A DNA stretch of 63,645 nt, counting the filler, from Bigelowiella natans CCMP2755 (Eukaryota > Protista > Cercozoa): the NCBI GenBank assembly GCA_000320545.1. It is 6 parts of 6 records of this genome, joined end to end, with 100 filler letters (N's around TTAATTAATTAA, not from the genome) between each part and the next. Parts side by side here need not be neighbours in the genome. Positions count along the whole stretch, not along the records: positions 1 to 24,244 come from ADNK01002406.1; 5 more parts are not named here. The stretch is one strand, 5' to 3'. Both the position numbers and the translations under genes were made by a program. Under the pieces are notes generated by a model, which was not told the DNA's origin, did not search any database, and saw only the letters and a list, made by a program, of their open reading frames with translations. Below, piece after piece: positions 1-10,405 of the stretch. Position 1 is the first letter of the stretch; each line of letters opens with the position of its first letter.

Positions 1-2301
1 TGCTTGACAGACCATTTTGTTAACGGATGCATCATTGAACGCCTTTAGCTCTTTTTATTGGAGGGGGAGCTCGGGAGAAAATGTGATTGATTGCATTGTT
101 CATGGCAACAATTTAGTTTTGTCGTTTTTCGAACAGGTTTGACACCACTCAGTTGGTGCAGCATCAACGGCCATCTTGAGATTGTCAAGCATCTTGTCAG
201 CATGAAGGCAGATATCGAGACGAAGGACAACAATGGTGAGTGGAATTAGGAGTGGCATTAGCAGTTGTGAGTGTAACTAGTATTCGCATTAGACATTGCT
301 ATGTGCTTGAGTTTGCCCAAATTCAGATGGTGATCATTTGGATTGTTGTCACCCCAAATTGCATTTTGCTTTACGGACTATTTAGTTGACGGATGCATCA
401 CTGAACGCCTTTAGCTGGTTTCATTGAGGGAGGGGGTGTGGACTTGGGAGAAAATGTGATTGATTGCATTGTTCATGGCAACTGTTTAGTTTTGCCATCT
501 TTTGAACAGGTGACACGCCACTCAATGGGTGCAGTTTTGAAGGCCATCTTGAGATTGTCAAGCATCTCATCAGCATGAAGGCAGATGTCGAGACGAAGGA
601 CAAGAATGGTGTGTGCAATTAGGAGTGGCATTAGCAGTTGTGAGTGCAACTAGCATCAGCATTGGACATTGCCATGTGCTTGAGTTTGCCCACATTCGGA
701 TGGAGATGATTGCAGATTGTTTTCACTGCAAAGTGCATTTTGCTTGACGGACCATTTGGTTGATGGATGCATCACAGAACGCCTTTGGCTCGTTTCATTG
801 AGAGAGGGGGGGTGGACTTGGGAGAAAATGTGATTGATTCCATTGTTCATGGCAACAATTTGGTGTGGCCTCTCTCGAACAGGTTGGACGCCACTCACTT
901 GGAGCAGTTTCAAAGGCCACGTTGAGATTGTCAAGTATCTTGTCAGCATGAAGGCAAACATCGAGACGAAGGACAACGATGGTGAGTGCAATTGGGAGTG
1001 GCATCAGAATTTTTTTTCCCCCGCAAATGGCATTTTGCGAGACGGATCATTTGGTGGATGCATCGCTAAACGCCATCATTGAAGATTTTAGGTCTTTTCA
1101 TTGGAGGGGGAGCTCGAGAGAAAATGTGATTGGTTGCATTGTTCATGGCAACAATTTAGTTTCGTCCTTTTTCGAACAGATTTGACACCACTAAGTTGGT
1201 GCAGCTTCATCGGTAATCTTGAGATTGTCAAGCATCTTGTCAGCATGAAGGCAGACATTGAGACGAAGGAGAATGGTGTGTGCAATTAGGAGTGGCATTA
1301 GCAGTTGTGAGTGCAACTAGCATCAGCATTAGACATTGCCATGTGCTTGAGTTTGCCCACATTCAGATGGTGATGATTGCAGATTGTTTTCACCGCAAAG
1401 TGCATTTTGCTTGACGGATCATTTGGTTGACGGATGCATCGCTGAACGCCTTTAGCTCGTTTCATTGAGGGAGAGGGGGTGGACTTGAGAGAAAATGTGA
1501 TTGATTCCATTGTTCTTGGCAACAATTTGGTTTTGTCGTTTTTCGAACAGGTTTGACACCACTCAGTTGGTGCAGCATCAACGGCCATCTTGAGATTGTC
1601 AAGCATCTTGTCAGCATGAAGGCAGATATCGAGACGAAGGACAACAATGGTGAGTGGAATTAGGAGTGGCATCAGAATTTTTTCCCCCCCGCAAATGGCA
1701 TTTTGCTTGACGGATCATTTGGTGGAGGCATCGCTAAACGCCTTTGGCTCGTTTCATTGAGAGAGGGGGGGTGGACTTGGGAGAAAATGTGATTGATTCC
1801 ATTGTTCATGGCAACAATTTGGTGTGGCCTCTCTCGAACAGGTTGGACGCCACTCACTTGGAGCAGTTTCAAAGGCCATCTTGAGATTGTCAAGCATCTT
1901 GTCAGCATGAAGGCAAACATCGAGACGAAGAACAACGATGGTGAGTGCAATTAGGAGTGGCATTGGCAGTTTTTGCACCGCAAAGTGATTTTTCCTTGAC
2001 GGATTATTTTTTGACGGATGCATCGCTAAACGCCTTTAGCTCGTTTCATTGAGGGAGGTGGGGGGACTCCGGGGAAATGTGATTGATTGCATTGTTCATG
2101 GCAACAATTTGCTTTTGCTCTCTTTCGAACAGGTGACACGCCACTCAGTTTGTGCAGCTTCAAAGGTCATCTTGAGATTGTCAAGTATCTTGTCAGCATG
2201 AAGGCAGATATCGAGGCGAAGGACAACAATGGTGTGTGCAATTAGGAGTGGCATTAGCAGTTGTGAGGGGACTAACATCAGCATTTGTTCATGGCAACAA
2301 T
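1..2301 (+). repeat. Tandem array of ankyrin exon + intron units (about 290-373 bp; 7 exons visible)
   Basis: Recurring blocks gagaaaatgtgattgatt.cattgttcatggcaacaat...gaacag|exon|gtg.gt.caattaggagtggca. Intron lengths are 274, 274, 198, 275, 192 and 192 nt. Confidence 0.95.
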
Positions 2302-4862
2302 ATCACAAGCATTGAGACTATAGTCGTGAGTCTCAATGTGGAGTTAGTGAATGGTAGTATGTTCTTCTCGGATGATTGAGTTTAGTGTTTGGAGTGGAAT
2401 TGTATTGTGAGTCGTGGCAGCTGAATGAGTAGTAATAATAGTGTCAAAGCTAAGTAGAGAACAAAATGCCGAAGAAGTGGTAGCGTAGGAAAAGATGGTC
2501 GATATTGAGGAATAAAGGATGATTGTGATGAAATGCATTGTATTTGTTGCATTTTTGTTTGTCTTTCAGGTAAGAGACCATTAGATAAGGCGGTAGAAGA
2601 GAACAATGACAATGTAGTGAACCATCTCCGCAATGAAACGACAAAGCTGGGCTTAGCGAAGATGAAGACCGAAAATAAAATCACAAACATTGCTAAGACG
2701 TTTTCAAGCGAAGGACTATGGACTTGTGCCAGGCTGTGCTTTCAAGGAAGTATCGCCGAGCTCAAAGACTTTGCTACAGCGAGATTTCCACGATTCTCCT
2801 TTCATTCGAAAATGGAAAAGGACGAATTGGTGCAGGCTTTAAAAAAACAAGCAATGGATGCGGTAACGGTTCGTTCCCTTAAAGATTGTTGCAGGAAATA
2901 TGGGATTAAGGGGTACTCTGGAAAAAACAAAGGAAAGCTGGGGCAGATGATTTTTGATGAAGCAACGTGTTCTATCCAAAGAAAGGTAAATGTCTGAATT
3001 TGTGAATGGAATCTAAATGGGTAGCATGCTTGGATGTTAGACATCAATTTATCTTGCTTCAGAGTTGTCCCGATCATCGATATTCAATGCAAATCTAAGA
3101 CAGTTCGTGCCTTTCTGATAGTCTAACAATGAACTAATGGAGTCGGATTCCGAGTCGGATTCCGATGATGAACCAATGGAGTCGGATTCCGAGTCGGATT
3201 CCGATTATGAACCAATGGAGTCGGATTTCGAGTCGGATTCCGATTATGAACCAATGGAGTCGGATTCCGATGATGAAGACGAACCAATCATCCGGTAGAA
3301 AGGCGCTAAGTGTTCACCAAGCAACATTTTTAAACGGAAATATAAATAGATCAAAGTCGGTGCCATCAAAGTCTGGTAAAAAGCGAGCAGAAGTGTCTAC
3401 AGTTGGAGAGTCTCTCGTTGCTAGACCCAGCAAAAAGGTCATTATTTCGAATGGCACTTGCAAAATATGCAACCAATTAGGATCACAAACGTGCTGCTGC
3501 TGCTGCTGCTGCTGTATCAGGCAAAACTTGGATCATATGAGGACAGCAAAGGGCAGGAAAATGGTGAAGAAGCTGAAAAATTTGAACGATTTCTCAAAGA
3601 AGCGCGTCTCTCTGAATTCGTGCAAACATTGCGTGAAGCTGGTTACGAGTATATCGATGATTTGCCCGAAATGGTGATGTTAATAATCTTGATATGAAGA
3701 GTAGTTTTTGGATATAATGTTAAGTAATCGTCCTATCGTTATAACATCTCAGGATAGTGATGAAAAGGAGAAGTTCTTTCCGAAAAAACCGCACCGTAGA
3801 AGGTTCGAAAAGGCGATCAAGGAAATGAAAAAGACCACTTCAGTGAAACCTAGCAAAAAGCCGAAACCTGTCATTGACCACAAGTTTGCATTAATTATCG
3901 GTAATGGAAAATACAGGAAAGGTCCATTGGGATCAAACCCTATCAATGATGCCCAAGTTATAAGAAACAAGTTTGAATCTGAGTACGGCTACAAAGTCTT
4001 CTATCATGAAAACCTGAAAAGTAAAGATATGAAAGATGCTCTTTATAAATTTGAAAAAGCACTCAAAAATGCAATCAAGGGGGGAGGCGAATCCCTAGCA
4101 GTTGTATTTTTCGCCGGTCATGGTGTCCTAACAACAACTGCGAACGGCTTGAGTGAAAATTTGCTTCTGGGTATCGATAACGTCGGTTATGAGGATGAAA
4201 GGTAGAGGTTATTGGCTCTTCGATTATCATTAAGTAACTGCATCTTCTTGTTGCAGGGATTTGCAAGTGAAAGAACTAAGTACCAAAGATGTAGTTACAG
4301 CCTTAGAAGAAGCAAAAGTCTCGATGAAAATCATGTTGCTGGATTGTTGTCGTGAAGTTTCAGGTATTCAAATCCATGTATCATCAACCACCTGCCAACC
4401 AACACAGCAACAATTTACCATCACATTAGGAATGCCACTTTCCGTGGTGAGCAAAAGTCGTTCGTTAGCGAAGAGTGGTTTGAAGATCCCAAGAGAAGAG
4501 GTGAAAGGATGCATGATACTCTACGCTTTTCAACCAGGTGAATTCATTTTTGAAAACGCAAAAAGATTCTTCGGGCAAAATAACACATTTCACCTGTGTG
4601 TGCTGTTTGCATGTTAGGCAAGCTAACTTCAAATGGAGATTATGAAAAGAAGAACGGACTCTTCACCGAATCGTTGATGGAAGCCTTCAAAAGCAGGAAG
4701 AATGAAAGGAATCCTCCAACATTCTGCGATCTCGTCAGTGAAGCTGGGAAAATCATGGAACATCACAATCAACAACCTGCTGTTGAAATTTCATGCGTGG
4801 GCCAGAGCATTTACATGTGCATCGATGGGACCCACTTCAAAGACTGGCACACGCTGCCGTAG
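137..4862 (+). CDS. Ankyrin-repeat / Rho-N(HeH)-like x2 / acidic repeat / SAM / caspase-like (peptidase C14, paracaspase-type) protein, 5' partial, multi-exon
   Basis: Ankyrin exons at 137-235, 510-608, 883-981, 1180-1275, 1551-1649, 1842-1940 and 2133-2231 (GxTPLxxxSxxGHLEIVKhLVSMKAdIETKD). Exon 2570-2985 has a capping repeat GKRPLDKA plus SIAELKDFA..KMEKDELVQAL and TVRSLKDCCRKYGIKGYSGKNK. Acidic exon ~3122-3294. SAM-like FERFLKEARLSEFVQTLREAGYEYIDDLPEM|DSDEKEKFFPKKPHRRRFEKAI. Caspase-fold motifs ALIIGNGKY..NPINDA, VFFAGHG (His), MLLDCCR (Cys), YAFQPG, NGLFTESL. GT-AG introns keep frame to the stop at 4860-4862. Confidence 0.88.
3130..3285 (+). repeat. Coding 36-bp repeat (EPMESDSESDSDD/Y) built from 12-bp GAGTCGGATTCC units
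   Basis: gaaccaatggagtcggattccgagtcggattccgat occurs about 4 times, in frame within the ankyrin-caspase gene. Confidence 0.85.
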
Positions 4863-5699
4863 CTGAAACGGCGAAGGGATGTGAAAGCCTTCAATATTAT
4901 CTTGCTAGCTTGTCAACACTATCTGAAAGAAGGCAACGGATGCATTCTGATTCTTTCTGTTCGCGGAAATGCAATGGACAAAATAAAAACAAAATAAGCA
5001 CAGAATGTCGAATGTGAGAAGTATGCGTTTGCGTGGTGTGCACAGCTGCATGCACACATGCAAAATGACAGACAACAAGGAATTTGATTTGTTTTTGCAT
5101 GCTAGCTTGTCTGTTGCCAAACATGATCGTGACATGACAAAGGCAACCCATGCGAAATGCCTCAAAGCCCGCCTTGCTAGCATGGCTCTCTAGCTCTGAG
5201 GTTGAGGTGGAACACGACTGCAGCTGGCGCTCGATCATGCTGCATGTGTGATTGTCAGGAGCATTCCAGCAAGCCAGAGCTCAATGGAACAGACTAGCAG
5301 ACCTCATCGAATGCCAACATGTGCAAACAACAAGGTACGGTAGCAAGTCGCTACAGATAGCTACCCTGGCGGTGCATGTTAGCATGCATGACGCCGTACC
5401 ATGCTAGCATGCTAGTATGCGTCTGCAATTACAAAATGCATTGTGGCGTGTGTCACGACAAACTCAAACGAATTTGTCTCATTTTTCCACATAACATGTT
5501 GACACGCATTGATGAATGTTCATGAAGATTCAGAAGACCAAGCCCCCTCTTTCCAAAATGACTGCAAAACAACCTGAAATGACAGAATATGGTCAGGAAC
5601 AAAAGAGCAAGATGTCCTTCATAGATAATATGGATAATGACTTTCAATTATCATGCTGATACCTCGATTACATAGAGTCTTTCCTCACAAAATCGAGCA

Positions 5700-7430
5700 A
5701 ATCAAACTGCACTGCTTCGTATCTACCCTGTTGCAGCATGAAGCGCCCCTTGCTACTACCAGTATTTCTTTTAATTTTCAGGGCATTGTACCAATCATGC
5801 ATGCGATTCCTGGCGTAGCAGCGAGTAACACTAGCCTCCTTTCCGATCGAGATTTTTTGTGCTTTCTACCATCTGCTGATATCGGAAAAACAAACAAACA
5901 TGTTGTTGAGGTAGAAGAAGGAAGGATCACTTTCTTGCAGCACAGCTTCAAGCCTGACTTTTCTTCCGAAAACAAAACCGAGTGAGCGAAAAAAATGAGA
6001 GCAAAAGGAAAGAGAACTGGAGAGAAAGTGGGGGGGGGGGGGGGGGAAGGAGAATTGATAATATACGGTAGAGAAAAATGTTCGTCATCATCGCATCATT
6101 TCTTGTTCATAATTGTCTTCATATTTCTGTTTCAATGCTTGATGTGCGTCACTTGCAGATGTGGACCACTTGCAGGTTTGCACCTGTACTCCCTCCTTCC
6201 GGCCGAATATCTTCAAAATAACTCGGATCTTCATCATCATTAGCAGCAGCTTCGTCAGACATCAACCTCCACATTGTCGCATCAAGTATGCTGCTGGCTT
6301 GGGGGCTGATTGTCGATCCTCCATCTCGATTCTCCCTACAAAATGCCGTATCAGCAGATATTACGATAAACACTCGCGAGACTTCCTTTGCTAGGACGTC
6401 CGGGGGGAAAAAAAAAAACCAGGAAATGTGCGGAACGGACCTGCGGATCTTCGCCTTTCTCATTCGCTCTATCACGAGATGCGAGTATTTGCTGTACTCC
6501 GCCGTTACGGACTGCGGCTGTCTACCTGAAGTGGAAGAGCGCGTTCATCGCGGTGGTTTTTAGAGGATGGTGGCAAGGACCCCGCCCCTGCAGAGGAAAA
6601 CGAGAACAGGCTGCTGCCGCCGATTTTCATCAGAATAAAAACTCGAAATTCATAATTCGGTTGGGCACATGTAGTAAAAACTCTCGCACCGACCAACACC
6701 CTCATTGGCACTGGCTATACGACATGTGTATATATGTGGGAGCATGCAAGGAGGCTGCAGATAGCGTACTTATAACGTCGAGCTCCTTCATCAATCGAAT
6801 GGGCTTTAGCCATAGATGTGGTATAGGCCGCACCTGGAAAAGGGCATCATACGCCGTTAATCACGGCAAATCAAGTTGAAATTTTTAGTCATGGCAATAT
6901 TGAAAACCCACTAAACGCATTGAGGAAACTTCCAAAAACAGTAAAGATATAGGCCTTTCATAGATAGAAAAATGCATCATTGAGTCGCCGCTTCCTCACG
7001 AATACTACCAAATTCCAGTCTTTGCACTTTTGGTTGAATTCCTCCACCCTCTGCGAATGTGTGTATGTGTGTGTGTGTGTGTGTGTTAGCGCGCGCGCGC
7101 GCACGTTCGACTACAACGAGGGAAAATGAAAGAACATCGTATGTCACATATCAAAGATTTCCATCTGCATTGCGTTCAATGAGTTATTTGCGATTCTGGC
7201 TGCTCATCCTATCCCTGAACACTTCGATAAAAACGTGTCCCGAGGTGCATTTGTGAGTATGTCCTTCTCAGACATCCACGTCATCATCGTCGATGTCCTC
7301 TCGTTGAATTCAATTGCGGTAGTATCATGCCTCTGCGCCCGCGCTCGTGGGTTGCTGCAACTCAACTGCGGCTGCTACCTGATGTAAATCCCGCAGCGCA
7401 ACGCCGCTTCCATCCAGCTCCACGCCTACC
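5700..7430 (-). CDS. Hypothetical multi-exon protein (boundaries uncertain)
   Basis: Splice-compatible exons on the minus strand, e.g. ..RANEKGEDPQ|DVLAKEVSRVFIVISADTAFC.. and RLEAVLQESDPSFFYLNNMFVCFSDISRW|NRMHDWYNALKIKR. No family recognised. Confidence 0.4.
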
Positions 7431-8789
7431 AAAAACAACCGGGAAAAATCAGGCCAAACCGAATGCTCAGTGCTCTGATTGATCACATTTTTATGCGTCG
7501 ATGTTTGACCGATGGATGTCAATTCGCCGCATCATTTTTCCGAGAGTTGAGGACTCATCACTCACCAATTGAAGGTGGTCGCTCGATCATAATGTTTCAG
7601 GTGGCGTGGCCGCGGTCGCGTTTTGCTGCGCCTTTCATTCTTCGAATTCATACATATTTTTATTAAAGAACAGTGCTGCTGCTACCAACCTCCAAAAGCC
7701 CTTTCTTCGTTCGTCATGAGGTGATGAATGCCCTACGATGATGATGGTGATGATGATGATGATGATAAACATGATTGTGAGCATTTAAAGAATAAGAATG
7801 ATGATAGATGAGATGGTGATAAAGACATGGTGTTTTCTAGTGTTAAATCCTCAGGAAATAGCGATCTTCATTCATCATGCTAGAATATATTGACGAAGAT
7901 AGAAGACGAGGCACCTTCAATTCCATCAGCATCTGTGCGCGATTCTACGTTTATTTAGTGATTGGCGTTACTCAGGAAGTATACACAAACACACACACAT
8001 ACACACACACACAAACCATGTAATAATCGAAATATGGTAGGCTTATAAACAAGCTAAACGGAAAGCAGCGTCCCATTCGTTCTCGTGCGACATGCTCGTA
8101 TCAAATATCGGCGTCTTCAGCTAAGTTTTCAAGCGGTCAAAAAGAGATTGCTATTTCGTTATTTGTCAGATTTTACATGCTCGAGCTCATGCATTTGATC
8201 GATCCAGACCTAGGTAAGAGGGAGGGGGGGAATGGGAGGAAGAGATAAACAGCATCATCATCATCACCACCATCCTTTTTTCATCACGGTTGTCTTCTTC
8301 CTTGTTGTGCTTTATTTCTCGATGATAAAAGAACATAATGCGTTCGGAACATCATGCTTTGATGAACAGGCAGACAAATGTAGCTTTTTGATGTGAAATT
8401 GGAAGCGTCTGTGCTCGATAACAACTTGAAAACGATTCGTCATCTATGTGTCAATTGGGAAAAACTGAAAATTGTTTTTTAAATCCTTTTATTGTTTTTC
8501 TTCAGCCCTTCTACTATCTTAGTTGCTGATTATTGCAGTTCTGTCATCCATTCCCCCTCCCCCCTCTCCCCCCTTCTCCCCCATCTCACCGGGCGGCAGT
8601 TATTCTTCTTCAGAAGCCTACTCGTAACATCGTCGTCCTGGGAAGAAGGCGGAGCAGAAATTTGTACGTGTGTGGTATACGATATTCATTTTCTAACAGA
8701 ATGGGGGAAAGTCAAACGAGCATGACGTAAAAGCGCGGATGATTGTCCCCTCCCACAGTAGCTAAATTTGTATTAAATCGCATTTCTTC

Positions 8790-10405
8790 TCAAGGCGACA
8801 AAGTCTATCATAACTACCAGGTGCTCCAGCGGCTTTCCCTTGCCTTTCAAGTTCTAAGTGTGTTTTATGCGTCCATCAGCCAACAACTACCGCATGCAAA
8901 CGCATTTGTGCATGTGCGCTATGGCTGTGATAGCGTGGTGTGCGATTTGTCGGTATCTGCCAGCACGGCTCTCCCGTTTGCCGCCATTCTCACCTTGAAG
9001 CTTCCATTCCAAACAGCCTCCTGTATCCTGGTCTCTACCATCCCTGAGCAAACCAAAGATTTGCAGAGCATACAGTGAGAAGGCATGCTCGGGGCGCATC
9101 ATCGCCGTTGCATAGGAGATAAAATCATCGACGCTTTTTCTCGTTTTTATATCGTCCAAAAATAAAACGACAGTCGTGCGCGAGGATAGCTGAAAGCAAC
9201 CGGATATTTCCTTCAGAGACTTGTGCTTTAGCTTTGAAGCTCCTTTACGCGTCGAGTCCCGCTTCTCCTCTGCCGCAACACCGTCAAAGCAAAAATTACA
9301 CAATACGACGAGGAGATCTCCTAAGATCTCTCATGGCAAAAGCTAAAAAAAAATCAGGGCTGGGCGATGTGACATTTATCACATGAACGCTTTCCGGGAT
9401 GGGCGGAGGGGGCCAACTGTCACAGCTGTGTGCTCTGGTCATGGTTAATCTTCCCAGAAGCATGCAAATTTTCCCGCTAATTTGTCTTTCTGAATTTTGC
9501 TGCAATCCACCTGCGCCTTGTTTGGCGTTTCGAAGTCGCTCTGTCGCATAGAAGGAGGCAACGTGGGACCTAATACAACGGTGTTGATTTCACTCCAATG
9601 ACATGAATCAGAGGCTAATGTCATCTATTTAACAATATGAGGTCGAAGTATCGAGCAGATTTCGCAATTTTCCTATCCTACGACAGGGCTATCATAGGGT
9701 GCCACGATGAAATAGGGAAAGTTTAAGAATATCATCAAAAACCTGCTGAAAATCTCAATGGTGTATTCATCAACGAACATTCTCGAAATATATACCTTTC
9801 CTCCGGACTCATGTTGATGTTGAGATCAACCTTGGGCTAAATTTTGAAGCGAAAAGGGTAAGGGGGGGGGGATAGAAGTTTCATTTCACTCATTGACAAA
9901 AACGAGACTTGTGTTTAAGCGGACCTTTGCTCCTTTGTGCTTCCGGACTCGTTCCCTTACAAAAATTAAAAGAAGTTTAAAAATGTTGGATATACGACGT
10001 TGTGCAGCTACATCAGCCCTACTACTAGCAGATGCGGAAGGGGCAGCACCTGTGGTCCTCCATCTTTGGCATCAACACCCGAGAGCTCTCACACCTGGCA
10101 AGCAAACCAAAAAGAAAGACCCGCAGTTCAGAGTCACAACCCCAACCTGCTCGGTACGACTATCTAGGAACTACCTCGAGAAGAAAACCTTGTCCCGTTT
10201 TGCTGTGGCAGGGGTCACTGCCGTCGAGCCCTCAGAAGAAGAGGTGGAGGAGGAAAGATGTTCTTCGTCAGTGGATTTCGGCGTCGTCGTTGCCGTGCTG
10301 CTGCTGCTAAAACGGAATAAGTTGAATCGAGACCGCATGTTCCACGACGTCGCTTTCGCTTTGGACGTAAGCACTGCAGCTTTCCGCCCCCCCCTCCTCA
10401 CGATC
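8790..10405 (-). CDS. Hypothetical multi-exon protein, possible organelle-targeting N-terminus
   Basis: Arg/Ser-rich start MIVRRGGRKAAVLTSKAKATSWNMRSRFNLFRFSSSS, followed by short GT-AG-bounded exons (PKVDLNINMSPEE; SHVASFYATERLRN; ISYATAMMRPEHAFSLYALQIFG). Confidence 0.35.

What the first reader, a model, noticed from the sequence alone, without database searches (positions are those of the whole stretch)
2570..4862. Ankyrin sensor fused to Rho-N-like domains, SAM and an intact paracaspase-type protease
Seen: after the array come two Rho-N/HeH-like motifs, an acidic repeat, a SAM-like domain and a C14 domain with the His-Cys dyad intact (FAGHG, LDCCR). Its N-terminal pattern ALIIGN..Y..L..PINDA resembles bacterial caspase-like proteins and paracaspases more than metacaspases. 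Known: SAM domains polymerise, and caspase-fold proteases are often proximity-activated. Inference: a single-chain sensor-oligomeriser-executioner, i.e. an NLR-independent immune or cell-death receptor in a protist. I do not recognise this architecture.
Basis: partly seen in the sequence, partly recalled or inferred. Interest (0 to 1): 0.8.

Follow-up and report, generated by a model that had tools for sequence, protein, structure and literature searches.

The report
Ankyrin–SAM–paracaspase fusion gene in Bigelowiella
An expressed, spliced gene of the alga Bigelowiella natans joins a variable ankyrin-repeat array, a DNA-binding-type SAP motif, an acidic repeat, a SAM oligomerisation domain and an intact MALT1-like (paracaspase-type) protease in one chain, a combination not described for eukaryotic caspase relatives and split up by the public gene models.

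Summary
Window 1-4862 (+) is the 3' part of one gene of Bigelowiella natans, with its 5' end cut by the contig edge. Spliced transcript contigs from three studies show every junction from the last ankyrin exon to the stop codon, all GT..AG, and poly(A) tails at about 5020 and 5095. There are at least 7 single-repeat ankyrin exons and 8 further exons, giving an open 808-aa frame.

- **Confirmed domains:** Ank; Peptidase_C14 (E 5e-22) with His (FAGHG) and Cys (LDCCR); and SAM, which is below Pfam's threshold but matches PDB SAM domains by profile (E 3e-6) and folds as a five-helix SAM (Z 7.7-9.2).
- **SAP/HeH motifs:** the second motif is supported (Ku70 SAP, E 4e-6). The first is not.
- **Protease type:** it is closest to MALT1 by sequence (profile E 5e-29, against 7e-12 for caspases) and by fold (Z 23.6). 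Its nearest relatives are bacterial C14 proteins at 26-32% identity over the C14 domain.
- **Family:** six full paralogs and two fragments exist in this genome, and no close orthologue was found elsewhere.

The proposed function, a SAM-driven, proximity-activated Arg/Lys protease guided by a diversified ankyrin surface with a possible immune or stress role, is inferred and not shown. I rate it a new variant of a known kind, of moderate to high interest.

The parts
1..136 (+). Intron sequence upstream of the first ankyrin exon held. The gene's 5' end lies beyond the contig edge.
   Evidence: The window is G000:C1331:1-24244, and the tandem exon+intron unit runs to position 1.
137..2231 (+). Array of seven ankyrin exons (137-235, 510-608, 883-981, 1180-1275, 1551-1649, 1842-1940, 2133-2231). 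Each holds one 33-aa repeat (32 aa in the fourth), is in phase 1-1, and sits within tandemly duplicated exon+intron units of 291-373 bp.
   Evidence: Pfam Ank E 7e-7 and 4e-8. TRF periods 373 and 291 at 83-85% matches. AG/GT boundaries and open frames. Only the last exon's splice to 2570 is seen in transcripts.
2570..2985 (+). Exon encoding the terminal (capping) ankyrin repeat, a helical linker, an unsupported HeH-like motif (about 2746-2850) and a SAP/HeH-like motif (about 2860-2964).
   Evidence: Joints 2231|2570 and 2985|3122 in three runs. Rho_N E 0.03 here and 3.5e-4 in paralogue P0004. Profile A2 hits Ku70 SAP 1jjr at E 4.3e-6. AF2 pLDDT 53, with 70-77 over motif 2.
3122..3294 (+). Exon encoding the acidic Ser/Asp/Glu-rich 13-aa repeat (DSESDSD.EPMES, about 3.6 copies).
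   Evidence: TRF period 39, 96% matches, at 3129-3270. Joints at 2985|3122 and 3294|3350.
3350..3437 (+). Small exon encoding a basic linker (8 K/R in 29 aa, NLS-like). The public model P0001 leaves it out.
   Evidence: Contigs of X1, X2 and X6 cover 3349-3438, and X2 record 7 joins it to 3523-3672. It is 82% identical to the end of the 601-aa Ank ORF of paralogue C3197.
3438..3520 (+). Intron containing a (CTG)n run, which the public model P0001 misreads as poly-Leu coding sequence.
   Evidence: Sequence. P0001 holds '[13 protein letters not shown]'. Transcript contigs skip it.
3521..3673 (+). Exon encoding the N-terminal half of the SAM domain (helices 1-3).
   Evidence: Profile A1 hits the SAMSN1 SAM domain at E 2.9e-6. 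AF2 helices have pLDDT about 90. Joint 3673|3753.
3753..4201 (+). Exon encoding the C-terminal half of SAM (helices 4-5, PKKPHRRRFEKAIKEM), a basic linker and the first part of the C14 domain, with ALIIGN..PINDA and the catalytic His (FAGHG).
   Evidence: Pfam Peptidase_C14 E 4.3e-14. Alignment to MALT1, where the His of FAGHG lines up with the His of MALT1's YYAGHG; by my own count from the remembered MALT1 sequence this is H415, and the Asp of PINDA corresponds to D365. SAM fold matches over model residues 11-78.
4257..4363 (+). Exon with the catalytic Cys in LLDCCRE (DxCR motif).
   Evidence: Aligned to LLDMCRK of MALT1. D224, C226 and R227 are invariant or nearly invariant in family alignment A3. 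Joints 4201|4257 and 4363|4430.
4430..4537 (+). Exon encoding the flexible loop (KSRSLAKSG) and the strand ending in YAFQPG.
   Evidence: Joints 4363|4430 and 4537|4618. pLDDT is below 50 at model residues 237-244.
4618..4862 (+). Last coding exon: the C-terminal part of the caspase fold, with stop codon TAG at 4860-4862.
   Evidence: Pfam C14 reaches P0001 residue 508. The fold aligns to MALT1 residues 336-569. Frame check.
4863..5095 (+). 3' UTR with two poly(A) sites, at about 5020 and about 5095.
   Evidence: Loose ends A17 at 5020 (raw RNA reads, X22) and A24 at 5095 (X6). X22 coverage is 3'-biased at 4691-5158.

Best explanation
**Shown.** This is one expressed, polyadenylated nuclear gene of Bigelowiella natans. 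It belongs to a lineage-specific family of six full paralogues plus two fragments. Its product, at least 808 aa with the N-terminus missing, reads: ankyrin array, SAP/HeH-like motif, acidic repeat, basic linker, SAM domain, p10-less MALT1-like C14 protease. The His-Cys dyad and DxCR motif are intact.

**Inferred mechanism**
- The SAM domain self-associates, as in tankyrase, SARM1 or DGK-delta.
- This raises the local concentration of the protease domains, which, like MALT1 and initiator caspases, become active on dimerisation.
- The protease then cleaves after Arg or Lys. Two of the three acidic S1 residues of MALT1 are conserved.
- The ankyrin array decides what the enzyme is brought to or released by. 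Its scaffold is constant, but the canonical binding-surface positions vary from repeat to repeat and from paralogue to paralogue.
- The SAP motif and the NLS-like basic stretches suggest action on or near chromatin or nucleic acid.

The paralogue expansion, the surface diversification and a bacterial-type protease domain together favour a stress, conflict or cell-death signalling role over a housekeeping one. That is the least secure step.
For: **Gene model**
- All eight junctions from the last Ank exon onward (seven tabulated as GT..AG joints, the 3437|3521 one seen in X2 record 7) appear in transcript contigs: seven of them in three runs of three studies, the 3437|3521 one in a single contig. 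Introns have about zero depth, and poly(A) tails are present.
- The frame is open for 808 aa.
- An ankyrin repeat is continuous across the 2231|2570 junction.

**Domains**
-.

**Protease type**
- In the PDB, the single sequence hits only MALT1 among C14 proteases (E 5e-4).
- The family profile scores MALT1 at E 4.8e-29 against caspase-1 at 7e-12, with no metacaspase in the best 60.
- Foldseek's top hit is MALT1 at E 3e-13, and VIA gives Z 23.6.
- The D365 and D462 equivalents are conserved.

**SAM**
- The SAM region matches polymerising SAM domains: tankyrase Z 8.8 at rmsd 1.6, BICC1, DGK-delta, and SARM1 Z 7.7.

**Family**
- Paralogues on C3197, C891, C1996, C2601 and C2135, plus fragments on C1432 and C1688.
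- Ank arrays lie upstream on the same strand in four of the five other full loci.

**Diversification**
- Exon identity (82-100%) is no higher than intron identity.
- 15 of 20 variable codons change the amino acid.
- Changes cluster at positions 2, 6, 7, 10, 11, 32 and 33, in the window and in C891 and C1996. By my own knowledge of DARPin design, these are the ankyrin target-binding positions.

**Distribution**
- Only B. natans proteins score better than E 1e-29 among 1.84 billion cluster representatives. The next hits are bacterial-type C14 proteins.
Against: - No biochemical or genetic data exist. SAM self-association, dimerisation-dependent activation, P1 specificity and any link to immunity or death are all untested.
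- Only the last ankyrin exon is shown joined to the rest. The upstream six exons and the 5' end are inferred.
- The third S1 acidic residue of MALT1 (E500) is not clearly conserved (Asn/Asp region, by eye).
- Structural scores separate MALT1 from caspase-9 and metacaspases only modestly (Z 23.6 against 20-20.7).
- The repeat diversification could reflect relaxed constraint after recent tandem duplication, not selection. The sample is small and no formal dN/dS test was run.
- Raw RNA reads (X22) are few and cover the 3' end only.
Confidence: 0.55

Rival explanations
1. It is a tankyrase-like scaffold enzyme and not a danger sensor. The ankyrin array recruits specific substrates, SAM polymerisation gives avidity and boosts activity, and the protease carries out limited, regulatory proteolysis, for example of chromatin or nuclear proteins given the SAP motif and NLS-like stretches. 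The role would be constitutive housekeeping or developmental.
For: - The order Ank, SAM, catalytic domain is the same as in tankyrase. I know tankyrase's domain order from my own knowledge and from the titles and abstracts listed (PMC4262938).
- The tankyrase SAM domain is among the best structural matches (Z 8.8, rmsd 1.6).
- The transcript is present in many runs from six studies with no obvious challenge, which suggests constitutive expression.
- The literature stresses non-death roles for non-metazoan caspase homologues (PMC5756287).
Against: - The family is lineage-restricted and multi-copy, with variable N-terminal parts and diversified ankyrin surfaces. This is unlike a conserved housekeeping enzyme.
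- No orthologue was seen outside B. natans.
Confidence: 0.3
2. The ankyrin array and the SAP-SAM-protease part are separate genes or separate transcripts, as in the public models, and the apparent fusion is a reading or assembly artefact.
For: - Public model P0001 starts at an internal Met in exon 2570-2985, and P0002 holds only the C14 domain.
- Logan contigs are short, and none spans the whole gene.
- In C1996 an EST-extended model (P0151) has a non-ankyrin N-terminus.
Against: - A GT..AG joint 2231|2570 is seen in contigs of three studies at the same depth as the downstream exon (64.7, 45.3 and 90.6).
- An ankyrin repeat is split by that intron and continues in frame.
- In C3197 the Ank array and the pre-SAM linker share one 601-aa ORF.
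- The frame is open across all 15 exons.
Confidence: 0.05
3. The family is a decaying relic of a bacterial gene transfer, and the protease has no function or acts as a non-catalytic scaffold.
For: - The nearest relatives are bacterial-type C14 proteins.
- Some copies are fragments: C1432 loses the protease, and C1688 holds only short pieces.
- C2135 needs an extra frame change or intron in the p20 part.
Against: - The window copy has an intact ORF, the dyad and the DxCR motif. It also has spliceosomal introns, poly(A) and good transcript depth.
- At least four paralogues (P0001, P0002, P0003/P0151 and the C2601 ORF) keep FAGHG, and the first three are seen to keep LLDCCR.
Confidence: 0.05

Closest known systems
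MALT1 / type 1 paracaspases (MEROPS C14B)
   Same: - It is the best sequence and structure match of the protease domain.
- Both have the His-Cys dyad and the DxCR motif.
- The D365 and D462 S1 residues are conserved.
- Neither has a separate metacaspase-type p10 domain.
- MALT1 is activated by oligomeric scaffolding and dimerisation, which is the mechanism proposed here.
   Different: - There is no death domain and there are no Ig domains, including the Ig3 that follows the MALT1 protease.
- Oligomerisation would come from a built-in SAM domain and not from BCL10/CARD filaments.
- Identity is only 17-21% in the structure alignments.
- It is a rhizarian gene, not a metazoan one.
Type 2 paracaspases / eukaryotic 'metacaspase-like proteases' and bacterial orthocaspases (p10-less C14)
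   Same: - It shares the p10-less C14 domain with the DxCR motif.
- Its nearest database relatives are bacterial-type C14 proteins at 26-32% identity over the C14 domain, and 31-52% within the best-matching p20 stretch.
- Choi & Berges 2013 report no type I or type III metacaspase in B. natans.
   Different: - Reviews state that eukaryotic and algal members consist of the p20 domain only, and that only prokaryotic orthocaspases carry extra domains, usually C-terminal (PMC5756287 and PMC5978004).
- Here a long N-terminal Ank-SAP-SAM region of eukaryotic type is fused in front.
- Ank and SAM are not among the 25 commonest partner families of the 88 nearest relatives.
Tankyrase (Ank repeat clusters - SAM - PARP)
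   Same: - It has the same order of modules: ankyrin array, SAM, C-terminal enzyme.
- The SAM fold match is Z 8.8 at rmsd 1.6.
- In tankyrase the ankyrin repeats recruit targets and the SAM domain polymerises (own knowledge; abstracts).
   Different: - The catalytic domain is a cysteine protease, not a PARP.
- The ankyrin repeats are one per exon and diversified, unlike the conserved ARCs.
- A SAP motif and an acidic repeat are inserted.
- Homology beyond the generic domains is not claimed.
SARM1 (ARM - SAM - SAM - TIR)
   Same: - It shares the logic of a repeat-domain regulator, a SAM oligomeriser and a proximity-activated executioner enzyme.
- The SARM1 SAM domains match the model at Z 7.7.
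   Different: - It has one SAM domain, not two.
- The repeats are Ank, not ARM.
- The effector is a protease, not an NADase.
- Autoinhibition by the repeat domain is not shown here.

Membership tests
Peptidase family C14 (caspase fold, clan CD) | Profile match above the curated threshold over the whole domain | tested here: met
   Pfam PF00656 E 5.1e-22, 79 bits (cut-off 21.4), profile positions 2-224 of 233 on P0001. E 4.3e-14 on the exon alone.
Peptidase family C14 (caspase fold, clan CD) | Catalytic His-Cys dyad in the conserved motifs | tested here: met
   FAGHG and LLDCCR align with MALT1 YAGHG and LLDMCR. H168 is invariant and C226 is conserved in at least 90% of alignment A3.
Peptidase family C14 (caspase fold, clan CD) | Caspase/hemoglobinase alpha-beta fold | tested here: met
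   AF2 pLDDT 83.7. Z 23.6 to MALT1, 20.7 to caspase-9 and 20.0 to metacaspases 4 and 9.
Paracaspase, type 1 (MALT1-like) | N-terminal death domain and Ig domains flanking the protease | tested here: not met
   No DD or Ig family was found in Pfam scans of the exons or of P0001. The protein ends about 25 aa after the protease fold.
Paracaspase (protease domain) | Protease domain closer to MALT1 than to caspases or metacaspases; DxCR motif | tested here: met
   Profile E 4.8e-29 to MALT1 against 7e-12 for the best caspase, with no metacaspase in the best 60. The motif is D-C-C-R. Caveat: Klemencic & Funk note that DxCR also occurs in prokaryotic homologues that do not group with paracaspases, and no phylogeny was made here.
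Paracaspase (protease domain) | Cleavage after Arg | not testable with these tools
   Indirect evidence only. The D365 and D462 equivalents are conserved, and the E500 equivalent is unclear.
Type 2 paracaspase / metacaspase-like protease | Consists of the p20-type protease domain only | tested here: not met
   Ank, SAP-like, acidic and SAM modules precede it in the same transcript.
Metacaspase types I-III | DxCH motif and a metacaspase p10 domain | tested here: not met
   The motif is DCCR. A PDB search with the single sequence found no metacaspase at E up to 1. Choi & Berges report no type I or III metacaspase in B. natans. The p10 domain was not tested with a dedicated profile.
SAM domain | Profile match and five-helix SAM fold | tested here: met
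   Pfam is below threshold (SAM_2 14.4 bits against 20.5; paralogue SAM_1 17.7 against 23). Paralogue profile A1 hits the SAMSN1 SAM domain at E 2.9e-6, with further SAM chains at weaker E. The model has five helices at pLDDT about 90. Every structural match confined to the SAM region (model residues about 7-85) is a SAM domain, at Z 7.6-9.2 and rmsd 1.6-2.7, with one outlier at 6.9.
SAM domain | Head-to-tail polymerisation | not testable with these tools
   It resembles polymerising SAM domains in fold only.
SAP / HeH / Rho_N helix-extension-helix motif | Profile match to a known SAP, LEM or Rho_N domain | tested here: inconclusive
   Motif 2: Rho_N E 0.03 here and 3.5e-4 in P0004, both below the cut-off. 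Profile A2 hits the Ku70 SAP construct at E 4.3e-6, but full-length Ku70 only at E 0.44. Motif 1: no hit, and hhalign against motif 2 gives E 0.18. AF2 pLDDT is 53.
Ankyrin repeat | Profile match above threshold, in tandem 33-aa units | tested here: met
   PF00023 at 29.6 and 33.7 bits (cut-off 21.1) on single exons. Seven units in the window.
NLR / STAND receptors | Central NACHT or NB-ARC NTPase | tested here: not met
   No P-loop NTPase family was found in any exon or in P0001. Paralogue C3197 starts directly with ankyrin repeats. The window gene's own 5' end is missing, so an upstream domain cannot be fully excluded.

The most novel reading that the evidence does not exclude
The family is a rhizarian innate-immune or cell-death receptor system built without an NTPase. 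Cassette-like ankyrin exons (99 nt, phase 1-1, one repeat each) diversify the recognition surface by tandem duplication, exchange or exon skipping. Ligand binding releases SAM-driven polymerisation, which activates a bacterially derived paracaspase-type executioner. Truncated SAM-only paralogues (C1432) act as decoys or regulators. It would be a protease counterpart of SARM1, evolved independently in a unicellular alga known to meet giant viruses.
Probability: 0.2. Interest if true: 0.85.

Novelty: new variant of a known kind. Interest (0 to 1): 0.62.

Why it matters
Reviews hold that eukaryotic p10-less caspase homologues (type 2 paracaspases, or metacaspase-like proteases) are bare protease domains, and that B. 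natans lacks classical metacaspases. This gene shows a eukaryote that wired such a protease to a recognition array and a built-in oligomeriser. That gives a directly testable case of how proximity-activated caspase-fold proteases can be regulated outside animals, and of how immune-like receptor logic (repeat sensor, oligomeriser, executioner) can arise without STAND NTPases or death-fold adaptors.

It also corrects the public gene models, which hide the architecture. B. natans is culturable, has a reference genome and has known giant-virus partners, so expression, knock-down and biochemical tests are feasible.

Tried and rejected
- A word-based protein search with the C3197 linker region found nothing.
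- Pfam on the isolated SAM exon gave no hit because an intron splits the domain. This was resolved through the public spliced model and the paralogues.
- The AF2 model of the SAP/HeH exon was too poor (pLDDT 53) to use for a fold search.
- A profile-profile comparison of the two HeH-like motifs was not significant, so I dropped the 'two' in 'two Rho-N-like domains'.
- Rfam found nothing in the window.
- Eight long ORFs elsewhere in the window gave no Pfam family.
- PADLOC gave only a generic caspase hit for P0001 (E 7e-6) and generic ankyrin hits for the C3197 array. These are not evidence of a known defence system.
- The 'SAM domain' mentions in Kaur et al. 2020 turned out to be radical SAM.
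- Separate-genes reading: rejected on the transcript joints. Pseudogene reading: rejected on the open frame, dyad and expression. Bacterial contamination: rejected on the spliceosomal introns and poly(A).
- The spliced model was never sent as a joined sequence to any search tool. Searches were made exon by exon, or with the public model P0001 and parts of it. The exons were joined only inside a script, to count frame and stops.
Full report
**Where it is and what organism**

The piece is contig C1331 (24,244 bp) of a 91.4-Mb assembly in 3,736 contigs. Paralogous proteins found by the exhaustive protein search carry the names EP00466_Bigelowiella_natans and jgi/Bigna1. The genome is therefore that of the chlorarachniophyte alga Bigelowiella natans (Rhizaria).

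**Gene model**

Three-frame translation showed a + strand gene in many short exons. Contigs of three runs from three studies were laid on 2000-5500.
- They cover the exons at depths of 45-130 and the introns at about zero.
- They show these joints, all GT..AG: 2231|2570, 2985|3122, 3294|3350, 3673|3753, 4201|4257, 4363|4430 and 4537|4618. One contig also joins 3437 to 3521.
- Untemplated poly(A) runs follow 5020 (raw RNA reads) and 5095, so these are transcripts.

The 2231|2570 joint links the last ankyrin exon to the next exon. It splits an ankyrin repeat, which continues in frame (..KDNN-G-KRPLDKAVEENNDNVVNHL..).

Upstream, six more AG/GT-bounded exons of 99 nt (one of 96 nt) each encode one ankyrin repeat in phase 1-1. 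With the eight downstream exons the frame stays open for 808 codons up to TAG 4860-4862. The array runs to base 1, so the 5' end is missing. Only the last ankyrin exon is seen spliced, and the other six are inferred.

**Domains**
- **Ankyrin:** Pfam E 7e-7 and 4e-8 on single exons.
- **Acidic repeat:** 39-nt period, 3.6 copies, 96% matches.
- **Protease, by sequence:**
  - Pfam Peptidase_C14 scores E 4.3e-14 on the exon.
  - On P0001 it scores E 5.1e-22 over nearly the whole profile. P0001 is the public 532-aa model of this locus, 100% identical over the query.
  - FAGHG and LLDCCR align with the catalytic His and Cys of MALT1, and the D365 and D462 S1 residues are conserved.
- **Protease, by structure:**
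  - The single sequence finds only MALT1 among C14 proteases in the PDB (E 5e-4).
  - A 46-sequence family profile finds MALT1 at E 4.8e-29, caspase-1 at 7e-12, and no metacaspase in the best 60.
  - An AF2 model of P0001:186-532 (pLDDT 83.7) matches MALT1 best: Foldseek E 3e-13 and VIA Z 23.6.
  - Caspase-9 follows at Z 20.7 and metacaspases at 20.0, so the structural margin is modest.
- **SAM:**
  - An intron at 3673|3753 splits the domain, which explains the blank on the single exon.
  - On the spliced models Pfam gives full-length but sub-threshold SAM hits in three paralogues.
  - A paralogue profile hits the SAMSN1 SAM domain at E 2.9e-6.
  - The model shows five helices at pLDDT about 90.
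  - All structural matches to that part are SAM domains, including tankyrase, BICC1, DGK-delta and SARM1 (Z 7.7-9.2).
- **SAP/HeH:** the second motif has consistent but weak support: Rho_N E 3.5e-4 in a paralogue and a Ku70 SAP profile hit at E 4.3e-6. The first motif has none.

**Family and relatives**

The genome holds five other full loci and two fragments. Mapping the window's exons on them shows the same order of modules. Ankyrin arrays lie upstream on the same strand in four of the five.
- In C3197 one 601-aa ORF runs from 16 ankyrin repeats straight into the basic linker that precedes SAM. This is independent support for the fusion.
- The N-terminal parts vary. C3197 shows no match to the SAP/HeH or acidic exons. 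C2601 has an unknown region of about 280 aa in place of the SAM N-terminal half. C1996 has a duplicated linker and an alternative N-terminus.

Among 1.84 billion cluster representatives, only four proteins score better than E 1e-29. Three of them are P0001 (this locus), P0002 (named B. natans) and P0003 (which clusters with a named B. natans protein). The fourth, P0004, matches the C2135 locus of this genome. The next hits (E 3e-16 and weaker; 26-32% identity over the C14 domain, 31-52% within the best-matching p20 stretch) are C14 proteins, often with two tandem C14 domains. Their partner domains are TPR, PEGA, FGE-sulfatase, Sel1, MORN, GUN4 and similar, a bacterial-type set. Ank and SAM are not among the 25 commonest partner families.

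**Ankyrin diversification**

The repeat units were duplicated with their introns (TRF 83-85% matches).
- Exon identity (82-100%) is no higher than that of the flanking introns.
- 15 of 20 variable codons change the residue.
- In the window and in C891 and C1996 the scaffold (TPL..GS..G.LEIVKYLV.MKA.IE.KD) is constant.
- Positions 2, 6, 7, 10, 11, 32 and 33 vary. By established knowledge of ankyrin and DARPin structure (my own knowledge), these form the target-binding surface.

This fits a recognition module under diversification. The sample is small and no formal test was run.

**Literature**
- Choi & Berges 2013 report no type I or III metacaspase in B. natans.
- Reviews define type 2 paracaspases, or metacaspase-like proteases, of eukaryotes and algae as the protease domain alone. 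They say that only prokaryotic orthocaspases carry extra domains.
- Searches for paracaspase or caspase-like proteases together with ankyrin and SAM domains, or with Bigelowiella, found no description of this architecture.
- The public models hide it. P0001 starts at an internal Met and reads a (CTG)n intron as poly-Leu, and P0002 holds only the protease.

**Mechanism**

Shown: one expressed chain with the listed domains and an intact catalytic apparatus of paracaspase type. Inferred: SAM self-association concentrates the protease domains. Like MALT1 and initiator caspases, these would need dimerisation, and they would cut after Arg or Lys. The ankyrin surface sets the target or trigger, and the SAP motif and basic stretches point to chromatin or nucleic acid.

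Two roles fit this anatomy.
- **Conflict, stress or death receptor.** The lineage-specific expansion, the surface diversification and a truncated SAM-only paralogue favour it.
- **Tankyrase-like substrate-recruiting scaffold protease.** The identical module order and the apparently constitutive expression favour it.

I lean to the first, with low confidence.

**Verdict**

This is a new variant of a known kind, a p10-less paracaspase-type C14 protease with a new N-terminal Ank-SAP-SAM architecture. It is of moderate to high interest and readily testable.

Noticed in passing
L023 (G000:C1432:20000-29999) 8513-8920: This paralogue keeps the linker and SAM domain but loses the protease just after 'PKPVITH', with a stop about 30 aa later. 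The same truncated product appears as the independent proteins P0028 and P0152. It may be a SAM-only decoy or regulator.
   Followed up: partly
window 3438-3520; P0001 residues about 166-180: The public gene model reads a (CTG)n-containing intron as a poly-Leu stretch, skips the real exon 3350-3437 and starts at an internal Met, so it lacks the ankyrin array. Model P0002 of paralogue C3197 holds only the protease.
   Followed up: yes
window 4128: Transcript contigs of runs X1 and X6 leave the genome sequence after 4128 and continue with 55 unrelated letters (AAATACCAAATAAGAATCAGACCGCGTTCG...). It could be an alternative 3' end, a paralogue chimera in the contig graph, or a strain difference. 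It remains unexplained.
   Followed up: no
L021 (G000:C2601:34000-43999) 4277-6349 and 7470-8738: This paralogue has a 691-aa single-exon ankyrin ORF (about 20 repeats). A separate 423-aa ORF follows, in which an unknown region of about 280 aa replaces the SAM N-terminal half before the C14 domain. Whether the two ORFs are one gene is not known.
   Followed up: partly
L020 (G000:C1996:1200-11199, minus strand) oriented 6926-8160: The basic-linker exon is locally duplicated (..PPKSNRKRAKAPTVEDPPTSSLSKK.. twice). Two product forms exist: P0003 starts in the first copy, and P0151 has a different, non-ankyrin N-terminus lying between the copies.
   Followed up: partly
proteins P0005-P0150: About half of the nearest relatives, which are bacterial-type, carry two tandem C14 domains in one chain. 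These may be built-in pseudo-dimers, in contrast with the single domain plus SAM seen here.
   Followed up: no
window 5159-5500: Raw RNA reads with the first mate on the minus strand begin just past the 3' UTR. This suggests a convergent neighbouring gene on the minus strand, but no Pfam family was found in the long ORFs downstream.
   Followed up: no
L018 6521-8323: The ankyrin array of paralogue C3197 scores E 8e-117 against PADLOC model PDC-M72A, and also against the 'Ankyrin' and MzaA models. This is most likely generic ankyrin-repeat similarity and not membership of a phage-defence system.
   Followed up: no
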